Position numbers and translations under genes: made by a program. From NCBI RefSeq assembly GCF_033153115.1, contig NW_026889751.1:2108001-2172000 (forward strand): a DNA stretch of 64,000 nt. The letters are read 5' to 3'. The notes under the pieces were generated by a model. It saw only the letters and a program-made list of their open reading frames with translations, was not told the DNA's origin and ran no database searches. The stretch is from Saccostrea echinata. Lineage: Eukaryota. Numbering within the stretch: position 1 is the stretch's first letter; each line of letters starts with the position of its first letter. This document shows, piece after piece, positions 27,245-56,200 of the stretch.

Positions 27245-30200
27245 ATGGATATTTTAAAAATTCTTTTTGTGACTGTAATGTTATCTTGTGTTTGTGACGG
27301 AACTTATTTCTTCAAACCCAAGAAAATATTTTTGCCTCCGATTGAAAAACATCATCATCACCATCATCATCATCATATTCATCCCCATCCTCACCCTCCT
27401 CATCCTCACCCTCCTAAGCATCCTCCTCATTCCCACTTTCCTCACAATCATCATCACCCTCACGGAATGGAGGACCACGGATTTTTCCATAAATTTCACA
27501 AGCCAAAATTCATCCATCACAGAATTCGTCCACTTCCAAAGCCAGTGATGTACAAGACTTTCCTTATTCGGAAATACAGCTTGCCACCAGATTTTCATGT
27601 GCATATTTCGTTGAATAAGAAAATATACGGACACTCTCATGGACCTTTTAAACCACACACCCATTATCCGAAAAATCCTACGTTGATGATGCACCAAAGT
27701 AAAATGAAGAAAATATATCGACCGAAACAATTTCCACACAAATATGGACAATATCCTGTGAAAAACATTTTGACATACGGAACTAGAGGAAAAGTTCCAC
27801 GATTTCCGGAATCGGGTATGCAGATACAAACCAATATGTTTCTTCCCACAGGAATTCTACATCCACCTACCACCAGGCCCTCAAAGAAGCCAAGAATAAG
27901 TAAATATGAACTATGGCTGAGGAAAATTAATGATTGGATGATAAGAAAACAGAATACCGCGAAGGGAATTCCTGTAAAAATAAAGCGCAAACGGATTTTT
28001 AATAAAATACATACGAATATTCCTAATCCACCTCAACGACTAAACATTCCTGAACCTCGGCCACGTAAAAAAGATGATGGTATTATTGCTAATTTTGTGT
28101 TTGTGAAACCACCTTTTATCAGTAAGAGTGAGGATCCAGTAGGTCAGGGGATCCCCGTTTCTGAAAAGCCTAAGCCTTCAACAACTAACAAAAAAAGGAT
28201 TACTCCAAAGCCAGAAACCGTTAAGTTGCGCCCTAAAGCCCCAGTTATGGGCATTCCTATTAGCCTGGATAATATAGGCCCACCATTTGATATTACTGAA
28301 GTTAATGATCTTCCTACGGGTGGCCTACCCCCACCTATTGAAATTATTCATGAACCAATCCCTGGTAGTACCGGCGGTGTCAATAAAGTCGATGTAGGGC
28401 TTCCTATAGGTTTGACTCCAGGACCATTTGGGTCAGATTCTGTCACACCACCCAGTATTATAGTGGATGGCCTCCCAACTGAACAGAATGTGAATAGCAT
28501 TGTTCCGCTTCCCGGAAACATTAACGAAATGTTGACGGATGTAGCTGATTTGTCTGAATTTCCAAATTTAGACCTCAGTAATGAGCCATTGATAATTGAA
28601 CCTTTTGGTCCAATGCCACCTGATAGTCAGTCTCCCCTGCCGCTGGACATACAACCTTTTCCATGGGACCCCTCTCAGATACCCTTCCCACCGGAAGTAA
28701 TTCCTCGTATATCAAATAAGGAAAAGGAGCCATATGTTATGAGACCACTGGAACCTATTGTTAAGATAATTGGCCGAGATAGCATAAAACGTAAAAACGA
28801 CACTATATTTGTACCTAAACCAATATCTGATCCAAAATATAACGAAACAGAACAGGTCAATGAATCGCCTTACAGTGTATTTACTGAGGGTCCAGTGGAA
28901 CCTTCAACACAAACAACAAAAACAACAATGCCGTCGATTCCTTTACATAGAATTAAAGGTGATCCTAGTGCAACAGCAGTCTTCACAACACAAAAACCAT
29001 CAGTAACTTACCAAACAACAACAATGACCCTACCTCCTTTATCAATTATGGAGTTAAGAGATTTTGAACACCCAACTTCTGCTACGGATGTCACAACACA
29101 GACAACAACAACAGAATTAGAAACAACATCGACAACAATGACAACTAACAGTATTCCGTCAACAGACCCTGCAATCATTGTGAATAGAACAACTGGCGAC
29201 GGTCAGAATAATATGGATATGGTAGATCAAAAAATAGGAAAAGAACAGAAGAATGAATCAGCCTTCTTTAAGTATAGACCTCAGGAAATAAACATATCAT
29301 TTCCCTACCTAATATTTGATAATCCAACGACTACTACATCAGCATCAAAGACTCCAAAATCTGACACTGTAACAAGAACTAGTACAGTGACCACAACAAC
29401 AGTGGCAACAACACTAATTACAAAAACAACTACTATGGATACGGAAATAGTAACTTTAAAGACGAATGCTAGCATGCCTCAATCAACAACAAACCTGTAT
29501 AAGGATACACCACGTGTGCCAACATTAACGACAACAATACCTGCACCTGTGGCTGTTGACCAGATAAATGAGGAAATAATTTTGGATTTTATGACAAATA
29601 AACAGCTTATATCGTCAAGATCCGACGTTGCGATTGATGACTCAACTCCAGATAAAGAAACAACAACGCAAGTAAGTAGTACATCAAAAATAGGCGAATC
29701 TACAATCATATGGCCCACAACGATGAAAGAAACAACACCGACAACAACAACAACAACTAATGCATTACCTAATACAACAACACGAATCCTAACAAGTCTG
29801 AAACCAAGCACAAAAACTGAGACAACTGAGACTCCAGAACTAGCGGAGGTTATTATGGCATCTTCAACAGCACAGCCACTAACAACAGCAAAAACAACAA
29901 CAACAATACTAAATACACCTGAAACAACAGGCATACCGACAACTACAGATAATTACTATTCACACACAGAGACCCCGGTGTATGACTATGTTACAGGCCC
30001 TTACGACTGGTTTTTCAACGAGACAGATAATACCACGTATTTATATTATGATGAGTTTATGAACATGACAACACACCAAACAACTGAAGTAGTCCTGGAA
30101 AGCACAACATCACCAACAACTGAAAGACCAGTAACTCCAACAATGAAAACAACACAAACGACACCAATATTGGTTTCTTCCGGATTTTTATCAAGTAACA

Positions 30201-31825
30201 AACCTACCACAGCAATGATGGATTTTAGAAGCACAAAGCAGACAACACTTAAACCATCAACCCAAACAACAGAGCCGGTGTACACCTCGACACTAATTTC
30301 TACCGAACAGGCAACAACTACAACTACACAGCCACCTGAACAGACATCATTAAGAGAAGATAAAACAACAACTCCAGTAGTAGTAACAACAACCTCCCCA
30401 ACAGTGACAAGCACCCAGAAACCTCCTGTCACTACGGCAACTCCAGCTTCAACTACAACCGAGGGACTAAAAATCTGCCAAGAAACGTAATAAAGATTAT
30501 AATAAATCATCATGTATTCATAGACATTTTTTTTTAAAATTTAAACATTCTATTATGTTCCTTTTTAAACATTTAAAAAATATATATTTTGCAGATATTG
30601 TAAAATCGGTCAGGAATGTACCGAAAACAATACATGGCTGTGTCCCACTGATGTAGCCGGAACTAACTGCCACTGTACCCAGGGCTGTAGAGTAGGAAAC
30701 ATGTTTATTCCGCTTGGCGAATCCTATCACTTAGACGAATGTGGAAGTGTGTGTTCTTGCTTCAACCTTTATGGAAAGGTATATGAATGTATTGTTTTTA
30801 TCTTTCGAATTACATTTTAAAAAGATTGAAGGTAGGCTAGTCATTTTATTGTGGAGCATTAGCTGTATTTTGTGTTTTTATCATTGATTAAATATTTGAA
30901 TGTTTTTTTTTTTGCTCTCTACCTCAAGGCTGAGTGCCACAGACTCCGATGCACTAACAGAACTGTAGCAGATCCTGTAAAGAAGCAGACAAACTACACC
31001 GGCATATCTATAGGCGGTGTGATATACATTCCTGTACAACGGGTCCAAATCCCGAAAAATAAGTCGAACACTCCTGGTGATGACGAATATACGTATGGGA
31101 TTTCGATTGGTGGCGTGATTTACATACCAAAAAGAAATCATACGAACTCTGAACTCGATAAAAATAACGACTGGACGTCGGGAATATCACTAGGTGGGGT
31201 CATCTATGTACCCTCCCGCGAATACACAAATGAACAAAATGGCAAAACTGATTATGAAAATGTGGTTGAAGGCAATTCCTCTTGGACAAAAGGAATAACT
31301 ATTGGGGGCATTATATATGTTCCAGTGCACAAAAGAAAAAAGACCTTTCAAGAAAAGAATCGAGAATTTGAAAAGATATATGACAAGACAAATTTTGCTG
31401 ATGCCGATGTTATACCTGTTAAAACACCATATGGAACCACAAGGGGAATAACTATTGGAGGTGTTATTTACATACCGAACAAAAACAATAACGAGCCTGT
31501 CCATTTTCTTGGTGAAAGCGAAATACAACGTAAAGAGGAGAAAAACCAGACCTCGCCCATAGAAGTGGAATATCCGGTGGGCTGGACAAATGGCATATCA
31601 ATCGGGGGAATCATTTACGTGCCCGTCCGACAACGCAAGAAGGTTGTACACAACCCTACTTATCAAATACCAGACATTCAAACCAAAAACTACACTAAAA
31701 ATGACTTTCCTTATTTGACCAAAACGGCTGGAATTCATATTGGAGGTATAATTAATGTTCCGATTGCGAAAAGATCGTCTATAAAATCTATAAAAATAAA
31801 AAAGATGAACCCGGCTTTTGGATAA
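27245..31825 (+). CDS. Cluster gene C: secreted ~1440 aa His/Lys/Pro-rich, Thr-mucin-like protein with 12-Cys module and GISIGGVIYIP-repeat tail
   Basis: Exons 27245-30486, 30595-30778, 30929-31825 (phases 2,0). Signal MDILKILFVTVMLSCVCDG. Module: CQETYCKIGQECTENNTWLCPTDVAGTNCHCTQGCRVGNMFIPLGESYHLDECGSVCSCFNLYGKAECHRLRC, followed by a ~290 aa tail. AATAAA near 31975. Confidence 0.93.
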
Positions 31826-33775
31826 ATTATAACAAAAACTTACGTACTCCATTCTTCTCTATGCTACAAACTTCACCGTGACGAGGCACACAGTCCCATT
31901 TGTATGTTATTTATTTTGATGTTTTATTATTTTGTCGTGTTCTGTTTTTGTCATGCTTTTTGAAATCCTTTTATAATAAAACGTTTTAAAATTCAAATTT
32001 TTAAAAATCTGTTCATTTAATGACTAACTCAGAGGTTTCCAGGAGGAATTGCTTGGCCATCTTGAAGTCCCCTAACGTAAAGCAGGATGAAGACCTTATC
32101 ACTTCTTTATACAAAAAGAGCATATTAAAGCTATATATGGTGTATCTGAGCTAAAAAAATAACAACAGGAGATTGAGTGTAGATAAACATGAAATACATG
32201 TATGTTATTTACGTTCAAATTAAAATTTTCACCGATTTGAACTTGAATAACCTCATGTTTCCATAGTTAAATTGACTTTAAACAGTGTCTGTTATTTAAA
32301 TGCGGAGTCAGTAAATAATTTGGATATTGTTTAAAATTTCTAATATCTTTGAAACGTGATTGATTTAAATTGTGTAATTTACAGGAAAGTCCTATCTTTA
32401 TATAAAGTAATAAAACAAATAGAAATCTTTTTAATTTTAGTTAGTCTGAACATAAAAATTACGCCATATATGACTTTAAATGTTCTGCATGTTCTAACGG
32501 ATATATGTAATCAATATTTTGACATAGGTTCCATCTCCATTGCTTTGCCTATTCTGTCACGTGCCTGGACGCCTACACCAATATATCTGATTTTCTTTTT
32601 ATCTATAGGCCTAAACATCTATCAGTATTTTTTAAATACCAGTATTGTCTGTTATACGACCATGTTTTATAATATTATTCATAACTTTCATTATTTTTAT
32701 ATATATATTTCAATCATTGCACTGTCAACTTAATTTTCGTTATGGCATCACCGATCATTTATGTACCAACCGGTGGACGTAGGAATACATTTTCTGTCAC
32801 TTGTCTTCACAGTCACATTGTTCGACACGAGTTAACTCCGAGGTCAAGTTTTTCAGCAGGGGTCCAACTTTTAATACAAATCTAATTTGAGTAAAAGAGC
32901 ATTTTTTTCGTAAATGTTGATGATTTTTCTAATTTCTGCTGTAAACACTTCTGTCTTTTCCATCATTAGTCATGAATGTCTATAGGTCTTACATGTAACG
33001 TTGTATTTCCGAGACAAATTAGTTTCTGAATTTTCCCTCCAAATTCGAGTATTTCTTTACCAGACAGTAGCTAGTTTTTTTGAGTTGAAAAAAAAATACG
33101 CGTAAACTTTAGAAATTAACTAGTTTTATGAAAATTATGGACTTGCTCATTTTAGTGTATTTGAGGGAGGGGAGGGGGGTGATTTGACCCGGAACTTGAT
33201 TTTTAAGCACTTGCTCTACTTCGACCGAAATAAATACGCGCCTTTTTGGATGCTTATTATAGTTGCATAACTAGGTTTATGGGAAAGAAAATTCGGACAG
33301 ATATATCGGGTCTGTCCGCATTTTCCTTCCCAGAGCTACGTTCTGCAGCTAGATGCCTATGAGATTTTGGTACTGAAATATATTCCAAAAGAATTGCTTT
33401 ACAATATCTGAAAAGGAAAAGAATACCCCGGTATGTTTTGGTTTTATCGCTGCCATTTTTATTAGGAATATTGCTTAAAATAATTTTACAAAATAATGAA
33501 AAATATTTTTTGTTACGAAAAGATTGTAGGTCGATCACTAAAATGTTTTTCTTAAATGAAAATTTTATTTTTTATATCAAAATATTGAAATGCTAGGGTG
33601 AATTACACCAAAAGTAAATTATACACTTCAAATGAATGAAAAAAGAGAGATTGGGATACATGAATATATAATCCACAGATGGAGAAATGTGAACCGTTAC
33701 ATGTATATCACTTTCTTGATTATCTTGTCTCCTCGTATGTCAATACTGCGCTATCTCCTAGATATACTTTCCATT

Positions 33776-37641: not shown

Positions 37642-39086
37642 ATGCAATTTCTAATCCTATTTCTCTTCTTTCTACAAATTGCCAGCGGAGTTATATTTCC
37701 TATTCGTCGCCCTGTTCGGGTCAGAGGTGATATAACGATGAGAAGGCCCCGGTTTCTACGATTTCCAATGAGATTTATTCCACTAGTCGGCAGAGTTTTC
37801 AGGAGCAGACGACTAATGCCAAACTCACATATTCACATACCACTCAATGGAAGACAATTCGAACACTCTCATGGCTTCAGTGATGTTGGTCATTCACATG
37901 ACACAGGGTTTCCTTCGGGGGTCTACCCTGAAAACGGAGTCGGATGGAATGTGCCAGATGAATGGAGAGATGCCAACACCTGGTCAATGTTTGATAAGGT
38001 CAATCCAGATTCTGTTCTTGTACGCAATAATGACCTTCCGATCAGTACACCAGACTTCGCTGGTCCCAGCGTCCCACTATTTCCTGATAACATCATACCA
38101 TCTGATGTTGAGGTCCCAATGGTTACATCAGAATTTCTACCAACTTCCGACAAACGAGAAGAACCCGTGGTTACAAGACCATTAACTCCTATAACAGATA
38201 AAATTGATGGTTCCTCACTACCAGGTATTTTTGTGAATAGAGATAATATTAATTCGACTGACACGAACAGAACTCAAGGGAATATAGAAAATAATACCAA
38301 CACAGACCTGGTCCAAGGTTCCAATACAACAACTGAAACGAAGGGACATGAGAGTACAAAGACCAATGAACCATCCTGTCATAAAACGTAAGTAGATAAG
38401 AAAAGTGTCATGACTATTTTTATAATGATTTCAAATTTTTCAATTAAGTATAAACTTAGTATCACTTAATTTCACATATTAACTTGAAATTTTACAGCAT
38501 AATTGATCACCTTTTACCACAACTTTCTTTCTTTATAGGGGTTGCATGACAGGTCACGAATGTGTCTTTTCTGGTTCCCACATTTGTCCCATATACATAC
38601 CGGAAGTCGACTGCAAGTGCAGAGCAGGTTGCAGAGTTGACTATACATTTATACCATACGGCACAACCGTCACCATGGATTCATGTGGAAACACATGCTC
38701 TTGTTTTAATATGTATGGAGCAGTAAGTATATTATTTGTTTCTCTGGGCTCAAAGAAGTATCCTCAATATATTGTACATCATACAGTATCATTTTGTTAC
38801 ATTATCGTGAAAATAACTACATTTATTTCTCTTTATTTCACAGCCAACCTGTTCAAATATATCTTGCAAAGCTAACTCCCAGAAATTATTACCTTCTGGT
38901 CCAACTATCACACCAAAAGAAAACGACATTTTACCAGCCAACATTTCAACACCACAGAATCCGTTACCGACTCCGGTCAACTTGGACGTCACCACGAAAG
39001 CTAAGCTGGAAAATAGCAAAAGAAAGGACAGCATCCTAATGAATTTCCCAGTGATTCCGATTGTCAGAGATACTCAGAAAAGTTAA
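37642..39086 (+). CDS. Cluster gene D: secreted ~390 aa Arg/His-rich then acidic Pro-rich protein with 12-Cys module and short tail
   Basis: Exons 37642-38387, 38539-38722, 38844-39086 (phases 2,0). Signal MQFLILFLFFLQIASG. Module: CHKTGCMTGHECVFSGSHICPIYIPEVDCKCRAGCRVDYTFIPYGTTVTMDSCGNTCSCFNMYGAPTCSNISC, then KANSQKLLPSGPTIT...DTQKS*. AATAAA near 39192. Confidence 0.93.
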
Positions 39087-41998: not shown

Positions 41999-42918
41999 AT
42001 GGCAGTACTTACGACAATGAGCATTCTTTTGCTGTGTTGTTTGTTATGTTTTGTGTATGTCGATTCATTTCTCTATGCTTCTGTTCCTTGGACTGTAATA
42101 ATTTTCGATGACATCGAAAACGATGCATCTGGGAACTATTACACGCCGTTCATGGAAAATCGACCCTTGGGGCCAGTGAACAACAGGAGGAGGAGACCCC
42201 CACCTCCTGTAGGCAACTTGAGACCCCCGATTCCCATGGGCAACTTGAGACCTCTGCAAAGGATGGCTCCAAACAATATGAACATTCCCAGACGGGAAGC
42301 GGTTACACCCGTAAATACTGTCAAGTACATCTCTCCATACCCTAGGTAATAATGATTTCAGTAACAGATATGGTTAGATAGTCCTTAATTCTTTTTGCTT
42401 TGTGTTTTTCGTAAATTGATGAAACATTTGGTACATCACTTTTTCAGTACACCTTATTGTCCTGTTGGACAACAGTACGTTTATTTGCCGCCCACTCTGG
42501 ATGGTGATGCTGTAGCGTCGATCTGTCCCCTGAACAATCCTGTGCATCCCTTATGTAGATGCCAAACAGGTGCGAGATTTTATAGATATTTATTTATGAT
42601 TGGAAACTTAAAGTTCATCAATATTTACCAATCAATTTATCTCTTCCGATTTTATAAATATTCTTTTACAAATTCTTTGCATCAATTTGTCTTCTCCTTG
42701 CAGGGTGTCGACATAAAAACTTCTTTATCCCCTATGGCACGTCAATAATGGTTGATAAATGTGGAAACAAATGCTACTGTAATAGCTTAAATGGAGAGGT
42801 AGGCTTTCATTAGGCCCCAATATTTATCATAAATCAACTGAAAATCAAAGAGATTATATATATGTGTTAATTGTTCTTTTACGTCTTGCAGGTGGAATGC
42901 GAATTCGACAGTTGTTAA
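41999..42918 (+). CDS. Cluster gene E: secreted ~196 aa Pro/Arg-rich protein with a 10-Cys variant of the module
   Basis: Exons 41999-42345, 42448-42569, 42704-42798, 42892-42918 (phases 2,1,0). Signal MAVLTTMSILLLCCLLCFVYVDS. Module: YPSTPYCPVGQQYVYLPPTLDGDAVASICPLNNPVHPLCRCQTGCRHKNFFIPYGTSIMVDKCGNKCYCNSLNGEVECEFDSC*. AATAAA near 43090. Confidence 0.92.
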
Positions 42919-43964: not shown

Positions 43965-45050
43965 ATGAAGTTAGAAATAATTGTTTGCCTTTTGTGTTTA
44001 TTATCTTTAACACATGCTTACTCTTACAAAAGGAGAAAAAATTGTGTGAAACGACCTTTGCCATATCCTCCGACTTATCATTACTACAGACCAAGGTTTC
44101 CTCCAATGCCATTCCCAAGATGGCCCCAGTGGAACGTGCCCGCTCCAACTCCTGTGGCCATGAAGTTTTTTGAGGTTGGAGGACAACCTGCGCCACCAAA
44201 CACTGACCAGATCCTACCTTTGTTTCCCCAGCCCCAGCCGCCAATTGACGTCAAACCTGTCATCCCGGATAACTCCGGACCCGTGATCGTAAATCCGGTG
44301 AATCCGATTATAGAAGATTCCGGACCCCTTCGTGGAGATCTTGCTCCTGCTCGTGATATTGTACCACCTGCACTGAATGGTAAACCTTGCAATGCCATGT
44401 GAGTAATAGGAAGTATTTTAGGTTTACTCTTTGGTGTGTTTTACAACAGTTCTCCATTATACCAGGAAGAATGATTTATAAATAGGTTTTTTTTTTGATT
44501 TCTTTTGTTCAGGAGTAATAATTGTGCCATGGGAGAAGTTTGTATGTATATTGACCAGTCAGTAGGAAATAGCTTTGTTTGTCCCTCGGCGACTGCAGTG
44601 TCATGTACTTGCCAACCAGGTAAAATTCTAACTGATACACTGTCTCCATTCTCTGCTTAACACTTGTCCCATTCCTCCCACACAAAAAAAATTCCTATTC
44701 TAACAGATTAGCCTAATTCCGAGCACTCTGTCTTAAATTCTTAACCTCTAACAATTAACTCCTCTAAATTTGCACGTAAGTAGATACATTAATAACGATC
44801 ACTTCGTGGCGTTATACAGGGTGTCGGCATGGGGACCTATTTATTTCACTCGGTAATACGGTGTTGGTGGATCAGTGCGGAAGCAAATGTTCTTGTATGT
44901 CGTTGTATGGAACAGTAAGTTAATCATCTAGTCATTGTTCTGTGCATAATCGCTTTCCCGATTCCCAAAGTTAATATTTCTAAATTGTGGTGTTTATTTA
45001 CAATCTCTCTATTTTATTTACAGGTCAGCTGTGACAAAAAAGCTTGTTAG
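43965..45050 (+). CDS. Cluster gene F: secreted ~220 aa Pro-rich protein with 12-Cys module
   Basis: Exons 43965-44398, 44513-44619, 44820-44914, 45024-45050 (phases 2,1,0). Signal MKLEIIVCLLCLLSLTHA. Module: CNAMSNNCAMGEVCMYIDQSVGNSFVCPSATAVSCTCQPGCRHGDLFISLGNTVLVDQCGSKCSCMSLYGTVSCDKKAC*. AATAAA near 45143. Confidence 0.93.
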
Positions 45051-47274: not shown

Positions 47275-50200
47275 TCAGATCTGGCATTTCTTTTCGCAGC
47301 TGCGGCACACATCAGCTTGAAACTGGGAGACCTATTTAGAATGGAAAATATTAATACATTCGTTAATTTACAAATTTTCTTACTTCTTTAATTCAATTTT
47401 AAAATAACTTTTATCATGCATTTGTTATTAAACATTTACATGCAATATAAACAAAAATAAAAATTTAAAATTATCCCCAAAAAACTTTTAAGAGTGAAAG
47501 AGACTGTCAAACAAAACTATATAATCATTTTGATGTTTCACGCGGAATTAGGTTCGATAACTCTTGTACCTTCAGTCTTGTTCCCTGATGCTTCCTACGA
47601 AGTTTGTTATACCGAGCCCGACATACGTCACACTCAACGCAATCTTCCATGTCAAAGCGAATAGTTTTTCTGCCAACAAGAACATTTCTCATTTTTTTCT
47701 CTCTTTCCAAAATCAATCACACAGTCAACATTGAACCAATCCGTTTTTCAATGAAAATGCCATGTTGTAACATAGCTTTCTACTCAGTTATGAATTTTTT
47801 GACTGTATACATGACCAAACATGATTTTCAATGAAATAAAGACATGGCCCAGTGTATCCCCGTCTGATTAAGTACGCACGAAGCTTTGTTTGACAACCCT
47901 TTCACCTTGCAGCTGTTACTTTGCAGACTTTCAATCACAACATTAATCTTTAATTCAAAACAAAATTCCGCCACCTTTTAACATTAATATGTATGTTATA
48001 ATATATATATGTTATAATAATCATTTTAGTATTGTATGCCCCGGCCGCACAATCAATGTTTGAATGCATCCTTACTTTTCCCCTTTTGCATCCATTATTC
48101 CACAACAGATTCAATGCGTTCCTTCCTTTTCACAAGAAAAAGGAAAAAAATCTTTGAAAGAAGCTGTTTAACAATTCAACAGTTCATTTTCTTGCTAATA
48201 AAGCATTGCTGCAGCCGAATCATAGTGTTTCCCTACCATCTACAAACCTATAGGGAGCATGGTTACATTGAGTTTACTATATGGCCACGGTTCGTCCAAA
48301 GCCATGTTGTTTGGTGTATTTTGCTACAAGAATATCTGCATATCTCCTCTCCTCTTCCGTTAACAATGGTGGACTTCCACTATTGGAAGAGAATATTGGT
48401 CAACCCGGATACATAGGAATTAAAGCAAAGGGGGTTTTCTTGAATACACATGGGGAGAAGTTAGAAACCATAATCCATCAACATAGCAATTCAACACTTC
48501 CATTTTTGCTTGATAAGTTATCAAATAAATTAATGAAGATAGCTACAGAATTTTGGATTATGTTTTCGAAATGGATATGCAGTTCCAGGTTCGCGCATCT
48601 AACACAGAATTGCACCTGTCGGCCTTCAAAAAAACCTTTCAATGTATACATGTATGTACCTGAATCTAGACCCTGTACGATCAATTAATTACCACTTGAA
48701 CAAAACATTTTTAATGAGTGCATAATTTACGTGAAGAAAAATATAATCAAATGAAATGTTGGTTAAAGTAACAAAATATACTGCGTGATTAGTCAACACA
48801 TGCAAAGTTCTGTGTAAATGCGATCAAACATAGAACAGCACAGCAGCGCAAGCACATGCAAAATTAGTAGAAATATGTACAGGTAAATCATCTATGAAGA
48901 AGTTTATATGGATGTGAAAACGAACCTTTCTTGACACCAAAGATTCAAAATTAAGTACCAGTTTTTGCAAATCGCACCTGTATGCCTTTTTTAAAAATGG
49001 TCAAGAAAGCCTCGTTTAGGATACGTAATATGGGATACACTAAAAGGAAGTGAATAGATAGATGTTCCAAATATATTAACTAAATAACGGTGATCTATAG
49101 TAATCATTTTCACCTTTTAATAACTAGTATCATCTGAAATTAGCAACATGCCAAATCTAAATTTTATTACTTCAGGTAACTTTATGTATTACTCGAGGTA
49201 TTACTGAACGATTAAATTGTAGATGATTGATTCAGAAAATATAAGCTAGTACATACACTGTACATATATAAAACAGTCAATGAATCCAGATCCCTTAAGA
49301 TATCAAATTTCTACAGAATATACCCCCGCCAAACACATATGTTTACTAATTTACAGCATTAAAAACATTTTCTAACTAATATCAACCCCTTTAACCGTTA
49401 AATATCCAGCACCATCAATACGACATAAGTCCCCCTCCCATTCTCTTCGCCAAAGATGAACAGATGTGAATTCAGTACTTACAATGGCTGATGTTGATAT
49501 CTTATTGGAGTTACTGGTCTAACTGGTGATAACTCGTCGTCGAAAATTTCCCTGGCGGTGCGGAGAGAGCCGCTCCGCTTCAGTCCTGAAGAGTAAATGG
49601 GTTTTGTGGGAGATGAACACGTCTTGCTGCCGTCATAAGGTTTGTATGTGTATGAGGACCCGTGAGAACCGATTTCTTTCGTGGGAGTTCTAACGGGACT
49701 TCGAGTTGGAGAGACTGACTGTGAGCCGTATGAGCGCCGATGAGCGCTATTAATTCCTTCTTTAATACTTAAGTTGGTTTCGCTTTTAGCGTTTTTGAGG
49801 ATGCTTCTGATGTTAGCATTATTTCGTTGTGGTGAAACGGATGAGCCATAGGAAGACCGCGTGGGTCCGTAGCTGGAAGACCGATATGGAGGTCCATAGT
49901 CATCAGTATTGTAGTAACGATTACAGCTCTCTTGTTGGACGGCATACTCCAGAGCCTTCATAAACGTTTTGTCGCCGTTTGGACTCTGTAAATCATACCG
50001 ACTTGGTCTTTGGTACTCCTCTTTATAGCGATTGTCAATAGGAGATTCTACAATACATTCAATTGTTTCCTTTGTATTGTCGTATCGAGTGTTTCTAGGG
50101 GATATAACATAAGACCTCTGAGGTCTGATGGCATCATTAGAGTTCATTAAATATGGACTATAAACTAAATGTCTCTTTGCTGGCTTCTCCTCGCTAAAAT

Positions 50201-53200
50201 TTCTTCCTTTTGGACTCCTGCTGCGACTGGGACTGTTTGATCTTATTGTTGGACTCTTTCTCAAATCTTTTTTTGGAGTTCGCTGAATATAGTCATCCTG
50301 TTCATCTTTATCTTCGTCAAATCTACCGATTGGTCGTTTAATGAAATATCTTTGAACTTCCAGATCATCTACTGAGTCATCGTCTGCTTCTCCAACAGAT
50401 GAATTGAAGTTTGATTTATAAGACTGTGACCTTCTGTGAGGGTAAATTTCATGGCGAGCTGAATTAGGGGGAGACATTTCATCGTATCCACTTTCTCTTC
50501 CAACAGAGATGGGAGTGGATCTTCCTGAAGTATAAGAACTAGGTTTCTGAGGTGATGATTGGAAGGTATCATCATAAAAGCGCCGAGAACTGCCAGCTGA
50601 TTCGGAGCGGGATCTGTAGGTAGGAGTTGATGTCATTTTGACATCTGTAGGGATTTCTCTTCTTCTAGGAGTCAGAAAAGAATCTTTTGTAAATCCATTT
50701 GGTTGGCCTTTGATGGTGTATCCATTTACTGGCTCTTCAAAGTCCTCTTCCTCTTCTTCATCATCATCATCATAAAGGCCGTTTTCTATATATTTTCCAA
50801 TAATCCCACTAACTTTGGATAGTTGACCTTGTTTCTGAAATTTTGATAATTCCCAGAATAATTGCTTTCTTTCTTTCCTGGCATCATCGAGGATGTTTTT
50901 GAGATCGTTGATGATGCTCTGTTGCTTTCCAGTAAGTTTCTTTTCCCTTGCCAAATCCTACAAAAAACAAATATGAATACGTGTACAGGTATTATTTATA
51001 CAGTGCATTTGAAAAATTGAAAAAGGCTAGACTAAAATAAAAATTCATTCTCATCAGAAAACAAAAGTTATTACTGGTATCATACCTCTTTGAGTTCTGT
51101 ATTTTCTCTCTGTGTATTTGCTAAAATGTTTTTGAAATTATCCCTTTCCTCAGTCAGGGACTGAAGTGTAGGAATGTCTTTTTTGGAGCTGCCAGCTAGC
51201 AAGTTTCTTGTTTGCTCCAGTTCAGCCTCCAGGTCATCAATGCTGGATTTAGCTGCCTGTAACTGTTTCTCAGTTTCTCGAAGTCTTTCCTCTGTACTTT
51301 CATTTCTTGTTTTTTCTTTCTCTAATTGTGTTCTCAATTCCATGTTTTCTGCCTGGGACCTTGAAAGATGAGCTCTACAATCATTTAGTACATCATTAGT
51401 TTTCTCCATTTTTTCTGTCATTTCAACATTTGAATTTTTCAACTTTGCTTGTAAAATGTCATTTTCTGTAATGGCAGTGGCAAGAGCTTGTTTCAGTTCT
51501 ATAAGATCTTGATCAGATATACGTGATTTGTTTGCTAGCTTTTTCCATTTTTCTACTTTCTTAGGATCATATCCAAGATTATCTGAAGAATCAATCCCCC
51601 AGATTTCTTCAGAGACTTTCCGTATTGGACTAGAATATCCTAAACTTATAGGCTGTCCTCTTCGAGTTGGAGCAAATGTTAAATTGCCATCAGGTGCTTC
51701 AGTGATTGATAAGTCCTGCAAACTTCGTGATGTGTAAGAATCAGGTGTATACTGCTCTGGTGAAGCACTAGAGTGTAATCTTGTTTCAGACTTTGACCTC
51801 ACAGGACTAGTTTCTTCATCCTTTCGCTGTCTGAACATTCTTCCTCTTGTGTAATCTGGAGATCTGGATGATCTTCTTGGTGAAATAGGTGATCTTGGAG
51901 ATCTCGTAGGAGAAATCCGTGGTGATCTTGCTTCTGGACTCTTTGCAATCTTCTCATGGACCTGTTCAGAAAGTTGTTTGGTGAGTTTGTCAATATCTTC
52001 CAATTCCGTATCATCTGATAGATTTGACTTTTCTAAAACGTCCATTTTTAATTTTAAGAGTTCCAATTCTCGGTTGAGGACTCTCACTAATCTTCTATTT
52101 GGGTCAGTTTCCCTACTGTGTCTGCCTGGTGAAGTCACATCTGCCACTTGAGTTTCTTCAGCAGGGGATTTTGCTCTAGGAGACCTTGGAGATTTATCTC
52201 CTTTCACAGATCCTCTCTCAAGACTAGATCTTGGAGACCTTTCTAAACTTGTTCGAGGTGACCTTTCTATACTTGCTCTAGGCGACCTTTCTAAACTACT
52301 CCTAGGGGATCTTTCCTGACTAAAGTCTACAGATCTGGTAAGCCTCTCCCTGCTGAATGCTCTATCAGGACTACTTCTTTCTAGACTTGGAGATTTAGAT
52401 CTGCTTGATGACCTATCCTTCAAAATGGATTTTGGGTATGTCTCCTCCTCTAAGCCTGACCCAGGAGTCAATGAACGTGGCCTATATACTGCTGGCCTTT
52501 CTGGTGATTTTCTTTCCCTTTTTCTGTTCCTTCCAACTTGCAAATCCTTTTGTATCTTCTCTTTCAGAGGTTCCACAATATCAACTCTCGGAAATGTTCT
52601 CTGCTCTCCATCACTTTCACCAGTATTTGCTTTCCTATCTCTCAATGGTTTTGATATTTCTAAAATATTGTGACTTGTTTCAAACCCGTCACCCACAACT
52701 TCCAGAATTCCACGTTTATTTGTTGGCAAGTTTGAAAGGTCAACACTACCATCTAGTTGAGAAGCAGATGTTGCATTAGGTGCAAAGGTCACTCCCCTAC
52801 CCTCATTATCTGCTTCTCTTTGTTTGCTATGCTCACCCTCTGGTACCACATTTGGTGCAACATCATCCACAGCATTTAAATCTAGTAAATTATGAAGACC
52901 TTGAGGACTCTGGTCTCTTGGTCTGTTTGTTTCCTGATCATGGAAATTAGCCTCATGCCTGGCTTGTCGAAGAGCCTGAAGAAAGAACTGCATTTCCGGA
53001 CTTGCACTACTTCCCTGTCCAGGCACAATGAAAATAGGCATACCTCTACCTATACCTGGATAATAGTAAGGTGGAGTCATTCCAAATGTTCCTTGATAGC
53101 CTGCCTCTGCACCTATTTCTATTTCCTCCTGAGATTTTGAGTCACCTTCTTTCATACTTGACTTGTCTAAATCACTTGATGTAATTGAAAAATTATCACC

Positions 53201-56200
53201 TTCTTGTTGCTGTTCAAGAGTTTTACGAGCTTCTTCCATTTTCTGCCATTCTTGTTTTCTGTTTTCAAACTTCTGTCTGGCATCTGCCATAATAGACTCA
53301 GTTGTCCTTGGCCGTTTCACAGTCCTAGACACAATGGGAAGGGGTTCTTTTACATTTGTCTCACTTTTGGGTGTTATTTTCTCAAGTCCTTCCTTCAAAA
53401 AAGTTTCATCCACATTTATTTGTAATACTTCGTCTTGTTCAGCACTTTCCTTGGGATGTATCTCCTCTTCCTCTTTCTGCTCAGTGTTTTTCTTTAGGGT
53501 ATTTTCCTTTGTTTCAGATTTTTGTATGGGAAGTTTTTCTTTTTTATCAGTTGTTAGGGAAATGGATCCAGACAACACACTTACACTTTCCTCATCTTCA
53601 TCTCCTTCCAGAGGTAAATGTTCTGACACTTGTTCAGAAATTGTTTTTATGATCAGACTCTCACCCTCAGGAGTTACATCTGGATCAACAGACTTCACAG
53701 AACCATTGGACGAGGAGAACCAATCAGAATTATCGTCTGCTAAATCATCCACTGATGAATGTTTGACCAGAGGTGAGGCTTTTTTCCTCCTCTCAGGTGA
53801 ACCAGAACTTGAGATTTCCTGAGATGACTGCTGCAAAAAAATTAATTAAAATTTTATCTATTCATTCTCAATATCAAGGTTTTTGCGACCAGTTAAAAAA
53901 AGTTTGTGGTTAAAAAAGTATAGACATTTACTTTTTCACTCTCTACTCTATCTTCAGTATACTCTAATTGGCCTAATGAAACCTAAAAAAAGAAAATTTT
54001 GAAAGATTAAATTTCAATCAACTAATAGGTATTACAACTTATTTTGTAAAATGTTAGCAGAAGAGAATTTGAAGTTGAAAGGAAATAAACGATGATACAC
54101 ACCTAAACTTTAGGGCATTAGATAGAGTTATAAAAGGCATTTGTAGAAAAAAAATTGATGAAAATGAAACAAAATCAAAAGCACATGCTTTTAAGTATTA
54201 TTTTTAATGAACATAATGACTGTATATACATGTACATGTATAAGATAGAAACACAAGAGAAAATTAAGATTAAATTAACACGACATGTTCACCAAGTTAT
54301 ATATGCCTCAATGATATTACTGTAGGAGTTATATATAACATGATTGAAAGCTCATGCATATATTATTTCTATGTATATATATGAAGTTTGGTTATACGAT
54401 GTATATTCTCAGAAACATTGATTTACTTACACTGCGGATGATAATTCACTGTTTTACAATAAAAGAAAGTGTTATATAAACTTTGTCGCCATGATTTCTA
54501 TATGCTGTCTATACTTGGTAAACTATAGCAGATTTCACACACTTAATAACTGCCATCTATAAAGTGAGGTTTTAAAATCATTTTGATTAATGCCTCCTAC
54601 CTTTCTTTTCAGCAGAGAGATATAGATCATCAAAGTGTGCTCATCTATGGTGCTTTCAATGACATCTGTTGGGCTGGAAAAAAAAGAAAGAACCACTAAT
54701 CTCAATACACAGTCTAGTTAGTAAAAAAAAAAAAAAAAAAAAAAATAGCACTCTACAGAATCAATATCAAGTCATGACATAAATTACAAAAGCTCAAAAA
54801 TCCAATACTTTTCAGTTGACTTTTAAGTTCTTCGGCACTACTTTGCACATTTTGCTTACTGGTGGAGTACTTTTTTATGCCGTTGTTAGGTTAAACACAT
54901 AATGGTCTATAAATTGTATAGAGAAGGTCTCACAGGTAATGATTGGATCTGAATATTGAGGGGTTCCCTCATACAAAGTAAGTAAAGGCACTATTTAAGC
55001 AGCACAAAAAGATAGATTTAAGAATAAATAAGACGGGATGATAAAAAGTGCCCAGCCATCTTGTATAGAGATATTGACTATTCAGCAAGACAGTTTAAAC
55101 TGTACAACCAGACCAGAGTGTGTTTTGTCCAAAGATCAATATTCATTCATCTATAAAAACATGTTGATGATATAATCTCTCTTTTTACAAATTGTACATT
55201 AAAACCCAATGATTTGCCAATTGTGCCAGGTGAAATAAAAATCTTCAGACGACAGGTTAACAAAGTCGCATGAAGAACATGCATTCTTTCCACGCTATGT
55301 TGCACTTTAAGAACATCGGCATTTTCAGGTAAACATTTTGTCCATTAATTCACGAAGTTTAGATTTTAATTCTTATGTTGGTACCCTTTCTTAGATATCC
55401 CTTTAATTTAAACAATTTGGATTATTCTTTGATAAATTTAACATCAAGTATCTGATTTTTCCACACAACAAGCATCAACACTGTGTTAACAAAAATGCCT
55501 AACAGATGTACTCATGTATGGTTGTACATATACTTGAATGTTGGTACATGTATTCGCATGCATTCCTGTGCAGCATGGATACTTGATTATACAGCATCAT
55601 TTTCACATTTCCAGCTTATTAATACACACACATCAATTGCTAATCCCCTATTTCAACACCATAATTAGACAAATATAAATTAAGGCAAAAAAGGATTAAA
55701 TCACAGTATATATACATGTATATATATATACCTAGAATTTCTCTGTTTTAACATTTATGCCATTGGTATTCCTACATAAGGTATGTACCTATGTATCAAA
55801 ACTTTACCTGGCAATAATCACTACCTGGACAAAGAGTGGCCAACAGTATTAAAAGAGAGATGTTATTTCTGCCTATTTACACAAGGATAAGGGTAATACT
55901 ATAAGGCTTATAGAACCACTTACTTGACGATGTCCTGGCGAATGCCCAGTTGTTTCTCCAACACTTCCAAAAGAGCCTCTAACTCCTTCTCCTTGTTCCT
56001 CACCTGTCAGGTAAATAAAGATGTTGATCAATTACCTTAACTGTATGTAAATCAATACTGCCCATTATCTGTCTGCTTGGGTCAGGTGTCTGGAAGTGCA
56101 GGGTATATAGTGTAGGAGAAATACTGGCTTGGAATTTTTTAATCATACCATAAATTGATATCAATTTCTTCAGAAATAATGGTTTAGACGAACTTTTAGC

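What the first reader, a model, noticed from the sequence alone, without database searches (positions are those of the whole stretch)
31001..31762. Seven copies of an 11-residue motif G-I-[STH]-[IL]-G-G-[VI]-I-[YN]-[IV]-P in the tail of gene C
Copies: GISIGGVIYIP (x2), GISLGGVIYVP, GITIGGIIYVP, GITIGGVIYIP, GISIGGIIYVP, GIHIGGIINVP. They are often preceded by W/Y-T and followed by basic residues, with unconserved hydrophilic linkers of ~20-40 aa. The copies use different synonymous codons, so conservation acts at the protein level. Beta-branched residues around a GG turn suggest beta-hairpin 'stickers' able to stack in trans or fold together; I do not recognise the motif. It is present in only one paralog.
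Basis: partly seen in the sequence, partly recalled or inferred. Interest (0 to 1): 0.75.

Follow-up and report, generated by a model that had tools for sequence, protein, structure and literature searches.

The report
Hydrophobic repeat tail of oyster mucin
A secreted mucin-like protein of rock oysters ends in a tail with seven almost unchanging copies of a short, very hydrophobic motif that matches no described protein domain and probably makes the molecules stick to each other.

Summary
Seven copies of GI[STH][IL]GG[VI]I[YN][IV]P lie at 31001-31762 in one frame. They are the only matches in the window and in the 923-Mb genome, and a reversed control gave none. The copies differ mostly by synonymous codons, and TRF reports no array over the motif copies.

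The exon belongs to gene C. The NCBI protein "mucin-2-like [Saccostrea echinata]" contains exons 2 and 3 exactly as I spliced them. An unnamed relative's contig also reads across the exon 2/3 junction.

The tail extends the last exon. Four of the five paralogs stop 0-7 residues after the shared Cys module; the fifth has an unrelated extension of about 70 residues. Relatives appear only in Saccostrea (both named hits) and a few unnamed close kin.

Across six orthologues the motif keeps 74-77 of 77 residues, the linkers 136-199 of 212, and the rest of the protein far fewer. Pfam, PDB, the ESM Atlas and full-text searches recognise nothing.

AlphaFold gives no confident fold (pLDDT 27 and 45). 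One model shows hairpins, the other straight strands, so "beta-hairpin" is not established.

Best reading, at about 40%: multivalent beta-forming stickers that link secreted mucin molecules. Rivals are a folded beta domain, a tyrosine cross-linking site and convertase processing.

It is a genus-restricted, undescribed motif of moderate interest.

The parts
27245..30486 (+). Gene C exon 1. It encodes a signal-peptide-like start (MDILKILFVTVMLSCVCDG), a His/Pro block, a basic block, a Pro/acidic block and a Thr-rich mucin-like region, and ends ...KICQET.
   Evidence: ORF. The GT donor after 30486 was read. It is 97% identical over 100% of its length to NCBI 'mucin-2-like [Saccostrea echinata]' P0046.
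30595..30778 (+). Gene C exon 2: most of the Cys-rich module shared by the paralog cluster (YCKIGQEC...CSCFNLYGK).
   Evidence: AG/GT boundaries read. The translation is contained exactly in P0046. Paralog copies were found by tblastn. Pfam gives only sub-threshold TILa (E 0.087, 13.4 bits against a cut-off of 27).
30929..31825 (+). Gene C last exon: the final two Cys of the module (AECHRLRC), then a 290-residue tail and the stop codon at 31823-31825.
   Evidence: The translation is contained exactly in P0046. The junction LYGK|AEC is read through in P0046, P0047 and P0011.
31001..31033 (+). Motif copy 1, GISIGGVIYIP
31097..31129 (+). Motif copy 2, GISIGGVIYIP, followed by KR
31181..31213 (+). 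Motif copy 3, GISLGGVIYVP
31292..31324 (+). Motif copy 4, GITIGGIIYVP, followed by VHKRKK
31325..31408 (+). Best-conserved linker (tail residues 133-160). It is almost invariant in 13 orthologous sequences, and the low-confidence model draws residues 140-152 as a helix.
   Evidence: Invariant columns; helix H140-152 (pLDDT under 50).
31445..31477 (+). Motif copy 5, GITIGGVIYIP
31592..31624 (+). Motif copy 6, GISIGGIIYVP, followed by VRQRKK
31730..31762 (+). Motif copy 7, GIHIGGIINVP (His and Asn variant, the same in all orthologues), followed by IAKR
31799..31822 (+). Conserved C-terminal end, KK-MNPAFG-stop
   Evidence: K291, K292, M293, P295, A296, F297 and G298 are invariant in 13 sequences.
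31975..31980 (+). Poly(A) signal-like hexamer, about 150 bases after the stop codon
   Evidence: Contigs of coded runs reach 31887 at most.

Best explanation
Gene C encodes a secreted, mucin-like protein of about 1,440 residues in the rock oyster Saccostrea. The order of its parts is: signal peptide, His/Pro-rich head, basic and Pro-rich blocks, a Thr-rich (probably O-glycosylated) stalk, a 12-Cys VWC/TIL-like module, and a 290-residue tail that only this paralog has.

The tail is hydrophilic and net basic, and carries seven N-x-S/T sequons. Seven 11-residue segments made almost entirely of beta-branched hydrophobic residues around a Gly-Gly pair stand out from it. Each is closed by Pro and followed by a basic residue.

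I read these segments as association-prone, beta-forming 'stickers'. They would pair with stickers on other tails, or on another matrix component. Seven sites per chain would then cross-link the secreted mucin into a gel or an insoluble layer.

Shown: the motif is real, is translated, is spliced to gene C, is nearly frozen in evolution and is unique to this gene. Inferred: beta conformation, intermolecular pairing, network formation, secretion and glycosylation.
For: - The motif positions are the only strongly hydrophobic stretches. Mean Kyte-Doolittle hydropathy is +1.50 in the motifs and -1.36 elsewhere, and every copy sits on a hydropathy peak.
- The rest of the tail has 41 K+R against 28 D+E, and the tail as a whole carries seven sequons.
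- Motif residues are 74-77 of 77 identical in six orthologues. Linkers are 136-199 of 212 identical, and the exon-1 regions about 44-60% in the distant orthologues. One-sided Fisher tests of motif against linker give p from 3e-8 to 1e-10 for the five more distant orthologues and 0.016 for the nearest.
- Contigs of coded run X1 differ from the window at 15 single bases in the tail. Twelve are synonymous and three are not. Both changes inside motifs are synonymous.
- Both AlphaFold2 runs place beta strands on motif copies, though with low confidence.
- No fold was predicted and no domain family matched, which fits a non-globular tail.
- The tail is an add-on to a family whose other members end at the Cys module. 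It is therefore a separable functional extension.
Against: - There is no experimental or tissue-expression evidence.
- AlphaFold2 confidence is too low to show any structure, and the two models disagree on hairpin against straight strand.
- Linker lengths are nearly fixed between species, with only four gaps of 1-3 residues within the 298-residue tail alignment.
- One linker is almost invariant. A spacer that only needs to be flexible would not be held like that. This points towards a defined fold or a defined assembly geometry.
- Shallow alignments of 11-13 close sequences often make AlphaFold2 fail on real folds, so 'no fold predicted' is weak.
- Copy 7 lacks the Tyr in every species, so the copies are not all equivalent.
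Confidence: 0.4

Rival explanations
1. The tail is one folded beta-rich domain. The seven motif segments, together with further amphipathic strands in the longer linkers, pack within one molecule into a sandwich, barrel or solenoid with long glycosylated loops. It would act as a binding domain, for example for chitin, mineral or another matrix protein.
For: Linker lengths are nearly fixed and linker sequences are 64-94% identical among orthologues, which is above the 44-60% of the exon-1 regions in the distant orthologues. One linker is almost invariant and is drawn as a helix. Twelve of 15 differences across the whole tail are synonymous.
Against: AlphaFold2 gave pLDDT 27.2 with pTM 0.23 for the tail and 44.8 with pTM 0.22 for copies 1-3. 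Units of 28-51 residues are very uneven. Linkers are rich in K, N, T and E, with mean hydropathy -1.36 outside the motifs. No Pfam, PDB or Atlas relative was found.
Confidence: 0.25
2. The motif is a recognition or presentation site for an extracellular modifying enzyme. The conserved Tyr in V-I-Y-[IV]-P would be oxidised by a tyrosinase or peroxidase, giving DOPA or dityrosine cross-links. That would harden the secreted layer covalently rather than through beta pairing.
For: Tyr is invariant in six of the seven copies and in all orthologues. It sits in a fixed sequence context next to Pro. That tyrosine oxidation hardens molluscan secreted matrices is established knowledge that I recall; no call tested it.
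Against: Copy 7 has Asn in place of Tyr yet is equally conserved. All eleven positions are conserved, more than an enzyme site would usually need. No modification data exist.
Confidence: 0.1
3. The tail is a processed precursor. Proprotein convertases would cut at the multibasic sites and release hydrophobic peptides, mostly carrying two motif copies each, plus a short C-terminal peptide ending in Gly that could be amidated. These would act as signals or antimicrobials.
For: Multibasic sites (KR, KRKK, RKK, KR) directly follow copies 2, 4, 6 and 7 and are conserved. The conserved end is KK-MNPAFG-stop. Repeated conserved peptides separated by unconserved spacers are the layout of peptide precursors, a point I recall rather than tested.
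Against: No basic site precedes any copy. Copies 1, 3 and 5 have no multibasic site after them. The tail sits at the end of a protein of about 1,440 residues with a mucin-like stalk. The motif is too hydrophobic to make a soluble signal.
Confidence: 0.08

Closest known systems
Gel-forming mucins (MUC2 type)
   Same: A signal peptide, a long Thr/Pro-rich stalk and a Cys-rich C-terminal module. The module has sub-threshold TILa similarity and a weak Atlas lead to VWC-bearing NELL proteins (score 0.82, a lead only). NCBI names the protein 'mucin-2-like'.
   Different: Pfam finds no VWD, C8, TIL or cystine-knot domain in P0046 or P0047. The head is His/Pro-rich instead. The seven-motif tail has no counterpart.
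Sticker-and-spacer proteins such as FG-nucleoporins (comparison recalled, not tested)
   Same: Short, conserved hydrophobic motifs sit at irregular intervals in hydrophilic sequence, and the spacers are unrelated to each other.
   Different: This protein is extracellular and glycosylated. The motif is 11 residues and beta-branched rather than a dipeptide. Spacer length and sequence are conserved between species. There is no homology.
Functional-amyloid repeat proteins such as curli CsgA, and the Gly-Gly hydrophobic C-terminal segment of amyloid-beta (both recalled, not tested)
   Same: Several copies of a short strand-turn-strand-prone segment. Small-xxx-small spacing and a Gly-Gly pair lie among beta-branched residues.
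   Different: The copies are separated by 17-40 hydrophilic residues instead of being contiguous. No sequence match to any solved chain was found. Cross-beta structure has not been shown.
Kelch-type beta-propeller repeats (consensus recalled)
   Same: Seven copies, a Gly-Gly doublet next to a hydrophobic strand, and recurrent Tyr and Trp.
   Different: Units of 28-51 residues are too short and too uneven for four-stranded blades. Pfam gave no Kelch or other propeller hit at E up to 10. AlphaFold2 built no propeller.
Multi-copy neuropeptide or prohormone precursors (layout recalled)
   Same: Repeated conserved peptides, basic residues after them, unconserved spacers and a C-terminal Gly.
   Different: There are no cleavage sites before the copies. 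Multibasic sites follow only four of the seven copies. The tail belongs to a giant mucin-like protein.

Membership tests
Any Pfam-A domain or repeat family (tail) | Score at or above the family's gathering threshold | tested here: not met
   five families at E up to 10. The best was PDXDC1-like_cen2 at 16.7 bits against a cut-off of 29. None recurs at the seven copies; scans of the full-length proteins P0046 and P0047 gave only sub-threshold TILa.
Kelch or other beta-propeller repeats | Pfam repeat match, and regular blades of about 40-55 residues that fold into a propeller | tested here: not met
   No such Pfam hit. Unit lengths are 28, 32, 37, 51, 49 and 46 residues. The AlphaFold2 model has pTM 0.23 and no propeller.
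Gel-forming mucins | N-terminal VWD-C8-TIL assemblies and a C-terminal cystine-knot domain flanking a PTS region | tested here: not met
   A Thr-rich region is present. Pfam finds no VWD, C8, TIL or CTCK. TILa scores E 0.14 and 0.26, far below its cut-off.
VWC / TIL-like Cys modules (the module before the tail, not the tail itself) | Cys spacing and a profile match | tested here: inconclusive
   TILa E 0.087, 13.4 bits against a cut-off of 27. The Atlas feature hit to NELL/VWC clusters scored 0.82, which the tool itself rates as a lead only.
Cross-beta (amyloid-like) assembly motifs | Fibre diffraction at 4.7 and 10 angstroms, dye binding, and self-seeding | not testable with these tools
   Only hydropathy and low-confidence strand predictions are available.
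Proprotein-convertase-processed peptide precursors | Cleavage sites on both sides of each repeated peptide, and the peptides detected | tested here: not met
   No basic residues lie directly before any copy. Multibasic sites follow 4 of 7 copies. Peptide detection cannot be tested here.

The most novel reading that the evidence does not exclude
The tail is a previously undescribed extracellular self-assembly module that arose within the rock-oyster lineage by extension of a terminal exon. Seven frozen Gly-Gly-centred hydrophobic segments would zip into intermolecular cross-beta sheets once the mucin is secreted. Together with the His-rich head, which could act as a metal- or pH-switch, they would turn a soluble glycoprotein into a load-bearing or adhesive solid, such as part of the cement, the periostracum or the shell framework.
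Probability: 0.15. Interest if true: 0.7.

Novelty: new variant of a known kind. Interest (0 to 1): 0.4.

Why it matters
Molluscs build shells, cements and mucus from fast-evolving secreted proteins, and little is known about how most of these assemble. In this protein most of the sequence drifts, yet 77 residues in seven copies have stayed almost unchanged across rock-oyster species. That marks them as the working part. If they are self-association elements, the motif would be a compact, testable peptide for studying how an oyster turns a soluble glycoprotein into a solid or a gel. It would also be a candidate building block for peptide biomaterials. The case further shows a family of Cys-module proteins gaining a new functional tail by extension of its last exon. 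If the tail is merely a lineage-specific folded domain, the result is a routine orphan domain.

Tried and rejected
**Tandem DNA repeat or recent duplication: rejected.** TRF finds no array over the copies, and synonymous sites between copies are scrambled.

**Chance or low-complexity artefact: rejected.** 200 of 200 shuffles gave a family size of 1 against 7 observed. The reversed control in the genome gave 0 against 7.

**'Exon not part of gene C': rejected.**
- P0046 and P0047 carry the junctions KICQET|YCK and LYGK|AEC.
- P0011, from a relative, reads through exon 2 into exon 3.
- Read evidence is weak. The 12 contig pieces shown (1 more not shown), from 4 coded runs, lie only on exons 1 and 3. 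None lies on the introns or on exon 2, and no joint was seen. None of the runs is on record as RNA.

**Known domain: nothing found.**
- Pfam.
- PDB sequences. The whole tail gave one hit at E = 1 to a ribosomal protein. P0011 gave 0 hits. A single 21-residue unit gave 0. A profile of the seven units gave one 9-residue match at E 0.76 to CysQ.
- ESM Atlas: no usable hit.

**Wider relatives.**
- HMMER over 1.84 billion representatives found 4 proteins at E up to 0.001. These were P0003 and three fragments of 41-84 residues.
- The word-indexed search of proteins of 164-521 residues found 4 among 5,764 candidates.
- The word-indexed search of proteins of 775-2,467 residues found 2 among 2,489 candidates, P0046 and P0047.
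- Proteins of 522-774 residues were covered only.

**DNA of relatives was not obtained.** No codon-based dN/dS between species was therefore possible. The 12:3 count stands in for it.

**Literature.**
- Four motif fragments searched anywhere in the text returned 3 papers. By title and abstract start they concern other proteins; I saw the listing only.
- 'Saccostrea' + 'shell matrix' + 'mucin' returned 4 papers, none on this gene by listing and abstract starts.
- 'oyster' + 'histidine-rich' + 'mucin-like' + 'mantle' returned 0.
- 'Saccostrea echinata' + 'genome' returned 23 papers, of which 10 were listed.
- PMC12564202 has no occurrence of 'mucin' (find mode).
- PMC6201952 has no occurrence of 'mucin'; I read passages only.
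Tissue-expression tables in them could bear on where gene C is expressed.

**Fold searches.** I ran none on the two models, because their confidence is too low for the matches to mean anything.

**Earlier scan notes.** They gave only first-reader notes on neighbouring parts of this window, and a word search gave nothing.

Full report
**1. What is there**

The window is AT-rich animal DNA, with GC of 0.28-0.42. Notes from earlier agents of this scan called the genome an oyster. I checked this. Exon 1 of gene C is 97% identical over its full length to the NCBI protein 'mucin-2-like [Saccostrea echinata]' (P0046, 1,410 aa). It is 76% identical to 'mucin-2-like [Saccostrea cucullata]' (P0047). The window lies in a 923-Mb assembly.

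Translating 30929-31822 on the + strand gives a 298-residue open frame.

**2. Is it more than chance**

Yes.
- A looser pattern run in six frames finds only these seven in the window.
- A degenerate DNA pattern finds 7 forward, 0 reverse and 0 reversed-control matches in the whole genome, all in this exon.
- 200 of 200 shuffles of the tail give no family of similar 11-mers larger than 1.
- TRF reports no array over the copies.
- Between copies, 128 of 231 codon comparisons differ synonymously and 50 non-synonymously. Nucleotide identity is 68% and amino-acid identity 78%.

The duplications are therefore old, and selection holds the peptide. Outside the 11 residues only three features recur. 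T is at -2 in 6 of 7 copies, W or Y at -3 in 4 of 7, and a basic residue within four positions after the Pro in 7 of 7. The linkers of 17-40 residues are unrelated to each other, with 0 of 28 pairs at z>3.

**3. Gene model**

- Exon 1 is 27245-30486, with a GT donor.
- Exon 2 is 30595-30778, bounded by AG and GT.
- Exon 3 starts at 30929 after an AG.
- The exon 2 and exon 3 translations are contained letter for letter in P0046, with junctions KICQET|YCKIGQ and LYGK|AECHRLRC.
- The S. cucullata protein has the same architecture and seven copies.
- P0011, a 324-residue product from an unnamed relative's contig, reads straight from the exon 2 sequence into the exon 3 sequence.

Direct read evidence is weak. 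The six runs that hold the stretch are only guessed to be RNA. Their short contigs lie on exons 1 and 3 only. None lies on either intron, and no joint was seen.

**4. The tail is an add-on**

The window holds six paralogous genes. Each has its own low-complexity first exon, and all share a C-terminal Cys module. In four of the five other paralogs the last exon ends 0-7 residues after the final Cys. One of them (module exon at 38543-38719) has an unrelated extension of about 70 residues. Only gene C has the 290-residue tail, and the genome holds a single copy of it. The module itself gives only sub-threshold TILa matches and a weak Atlas lead to VWC-bearing NELL proteins.

**5. Distribution**

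- HMMER against 1.84 billion representative proteins found P0003 and three short fragments, and nothing else.
- The word-indexed searches found four tail-length products at 73-82% identity.
- Among long proteins they found only P0046 and P0047.
- The only named sources are Saccostrea. The unnamed ones are close kin.
- I could not test whether Crassostrea, Magallana or Ostrea have an orthologue without the tail.

**6. Conservation**

| Region | Identity to the window across orthologues |
|---|---|
| Motif positions (six orthologues) | 74-77 of 77 |
| Linker positions (six orthologues) | 136-199 of 212 |
| Exon-1 regions, distant orthologues P0048-P0050 and P0014 | about 44-60% for most regions |
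| Pro/acidic block in P0048 | 176 of 250 |

- The excess of motif over linker conservation is significant. One-sided Fisher p is 3e-8 to 1e-10 for five orthologues and 0.016 for the nearest.
- All seven copies sit at the same places in every orthologue, and the tail alignment has only four small gaps. The seven-copy layout therefore predates the split of these species.
- Contigs of run X1 differ from the window at 15 single bases in the tail. Twelve are synonymous and three are not. The three lie in linkers and both motif changes are silent. There is also one in-frame 6-base insertion.
- The whole tail, linkers included, is thus under purifying selection.

**7. Structure**

- AlphaFold2 on the tail with 13 orthologous sequences gave mean pLDDT 27.2 and pTM 0.23. 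DSSP on that model shows strand, two-residue break at Gly-Gly, strand at copies 1-4, one strand at copy 5 and a helix at 140-152.
- A second run on copies 1-3 gave pLDDT 44.8. It drew copies 2 and 3 as unbroken strands and copy 1 as coil.
- Both runs place strands on motif copies, but the hairpin is not established and no fold is supported.
- Hydropathy is +1.50 in the motifs and -1.36 elsewhere. The non-motif part has 41 K+R against 28 D+E, and the tail carries seven N-x-S/T sequons.

**8. Mechanism**

The most likely reading, at about 0.4, is a multivalent set of beta-forming hydrophobic stickers on a hydrophilic, glycosylated, basic tail that links secreted molecules to each other or to a matrix. 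What speaks against a pure sticker-spacer picture is the fixed length and good conservation of the linkers, and one nearly invariant linker. These keep a single folded beta domain alive as a rival (0.25).

Two smaller rivals remain.
- The invariant Tyr may be a site for oxidative cross-linking (0.1). Against this, copy 7 lacks Tyr in every species.
- Convertases may process the tail (0.08). Multibasic sites follow copies 2, 4, 6 and 7, and the protein ends KK-MNPAFG. Against this, no basic site precedes any copy.

**9. Comparison with known kinds**

By sequence the tail belongs to no described family. The motif strings do not occur in the searched literature in any relevant paper (listing only). 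The protein as a whole is only loosely mucin-like. It has a Thr-rich stalk and a Cys module but none of the defining mucin domains. Resemblances to sticker-spacer proteins, curli-type repeats, the Gly-Gly hydrophobic end of amyloid-beta and Kelch blades are recalled analogies. Where testable (Kelch), the test failed.

**10. Verdict**

This is a genus-restricted, undescribed motif in an already annotated gene. I rate it a new variant of a known kind, namely secreted low-complexity matrix or mucin proteins with short association motifs. Interest is 0.4.

Noticed in passing
window 14358-44911 (module exons at 16370-16284 and 14438-14358 -, 22666-22583 -, 30596-30778 +, 38543-38719 +, 42688-42798 +, 44819-44911 +): A cluster of six secreted-protein genes. 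Their first exons are quite different: Ser/Asn-rich (1,267 aa), GFNGQ-repeat (322 aa), His/Pro/Thr-rich (1,080 aa), and shorter Pro-rich ones. All end in the same Cys module split over the last two or three exons. Pfam recognises none of those tested.
   Followed up: partly
window 28934-28969 and 29450-29503: The NCBI model P0046 lacks 12 and 18 residues that the continuous exon-1 reading frame of the window encodes. Both skipped stretches can be read as GT...AG mini-introns of 36 and 54 bases (the first with a one-base shift). They may be annotation artefacts or real in-frame alternative splicing. Unnamed orthologue P0048 keeps the first stretch and P0047 keeps the second.
   Followed up: partly
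window 31799-31822: The protein ends KK-MNPAFG-stop, invariant in 13 orthologous sequences apart from N/D at one position. A dibasic site followed by a peptide ending in Gly is the layout of an amidated peptide.
   Followed up: no
window 31097-31777: There is a higher-order pattern. Multibasic clusters (KR, KRKK, RKK, KR) directly follow copies 2, 4, 6 and 7 but not copies 1, 3 and 5. Copies 4 and 6 share an extended 20-residue similarity, W-T-x-motif-V-[HR]-x-R-K-K, which suggests that a two-copy unit was duplicated.
   Followed up: partly
window 31325-31408: The linker after copy 4 is almost invariant across orthologues, more so than any other linker. The low-confidence model draws part of it as the only helix.
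   Followed up: partly
window 38817-39086: The paralog whose module exon lies at 38543-38719 also has a C-terminal extension after the last Cys. It is about 70 residues, Pro/Thr/Asn-rich, has no GG motif and is unrelated to gene C's tail.
   Followed up: no
cluster listing (P0014, P0015): Two products of 983 and 989 residues are listed as members of the 90% cluster of the tail protein P0002. They are exon-1 orthologues that contain no tail sequence, so cluster membership there is not a reliable sign of shared sequence.
   Followed up: no
window 12973-13118: A run of 146 N lies between the two module exons of the paralog on the minus strand.
   Followed up: no
window 49479-53836 (-): Two long open frames of 491 and 918 aa encode a Ser/Arg/Glu-rich protein that looks coiled-coil-rich. 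It is apparently an unrelated intracellular gene next to the cluster.
   Followed up: no
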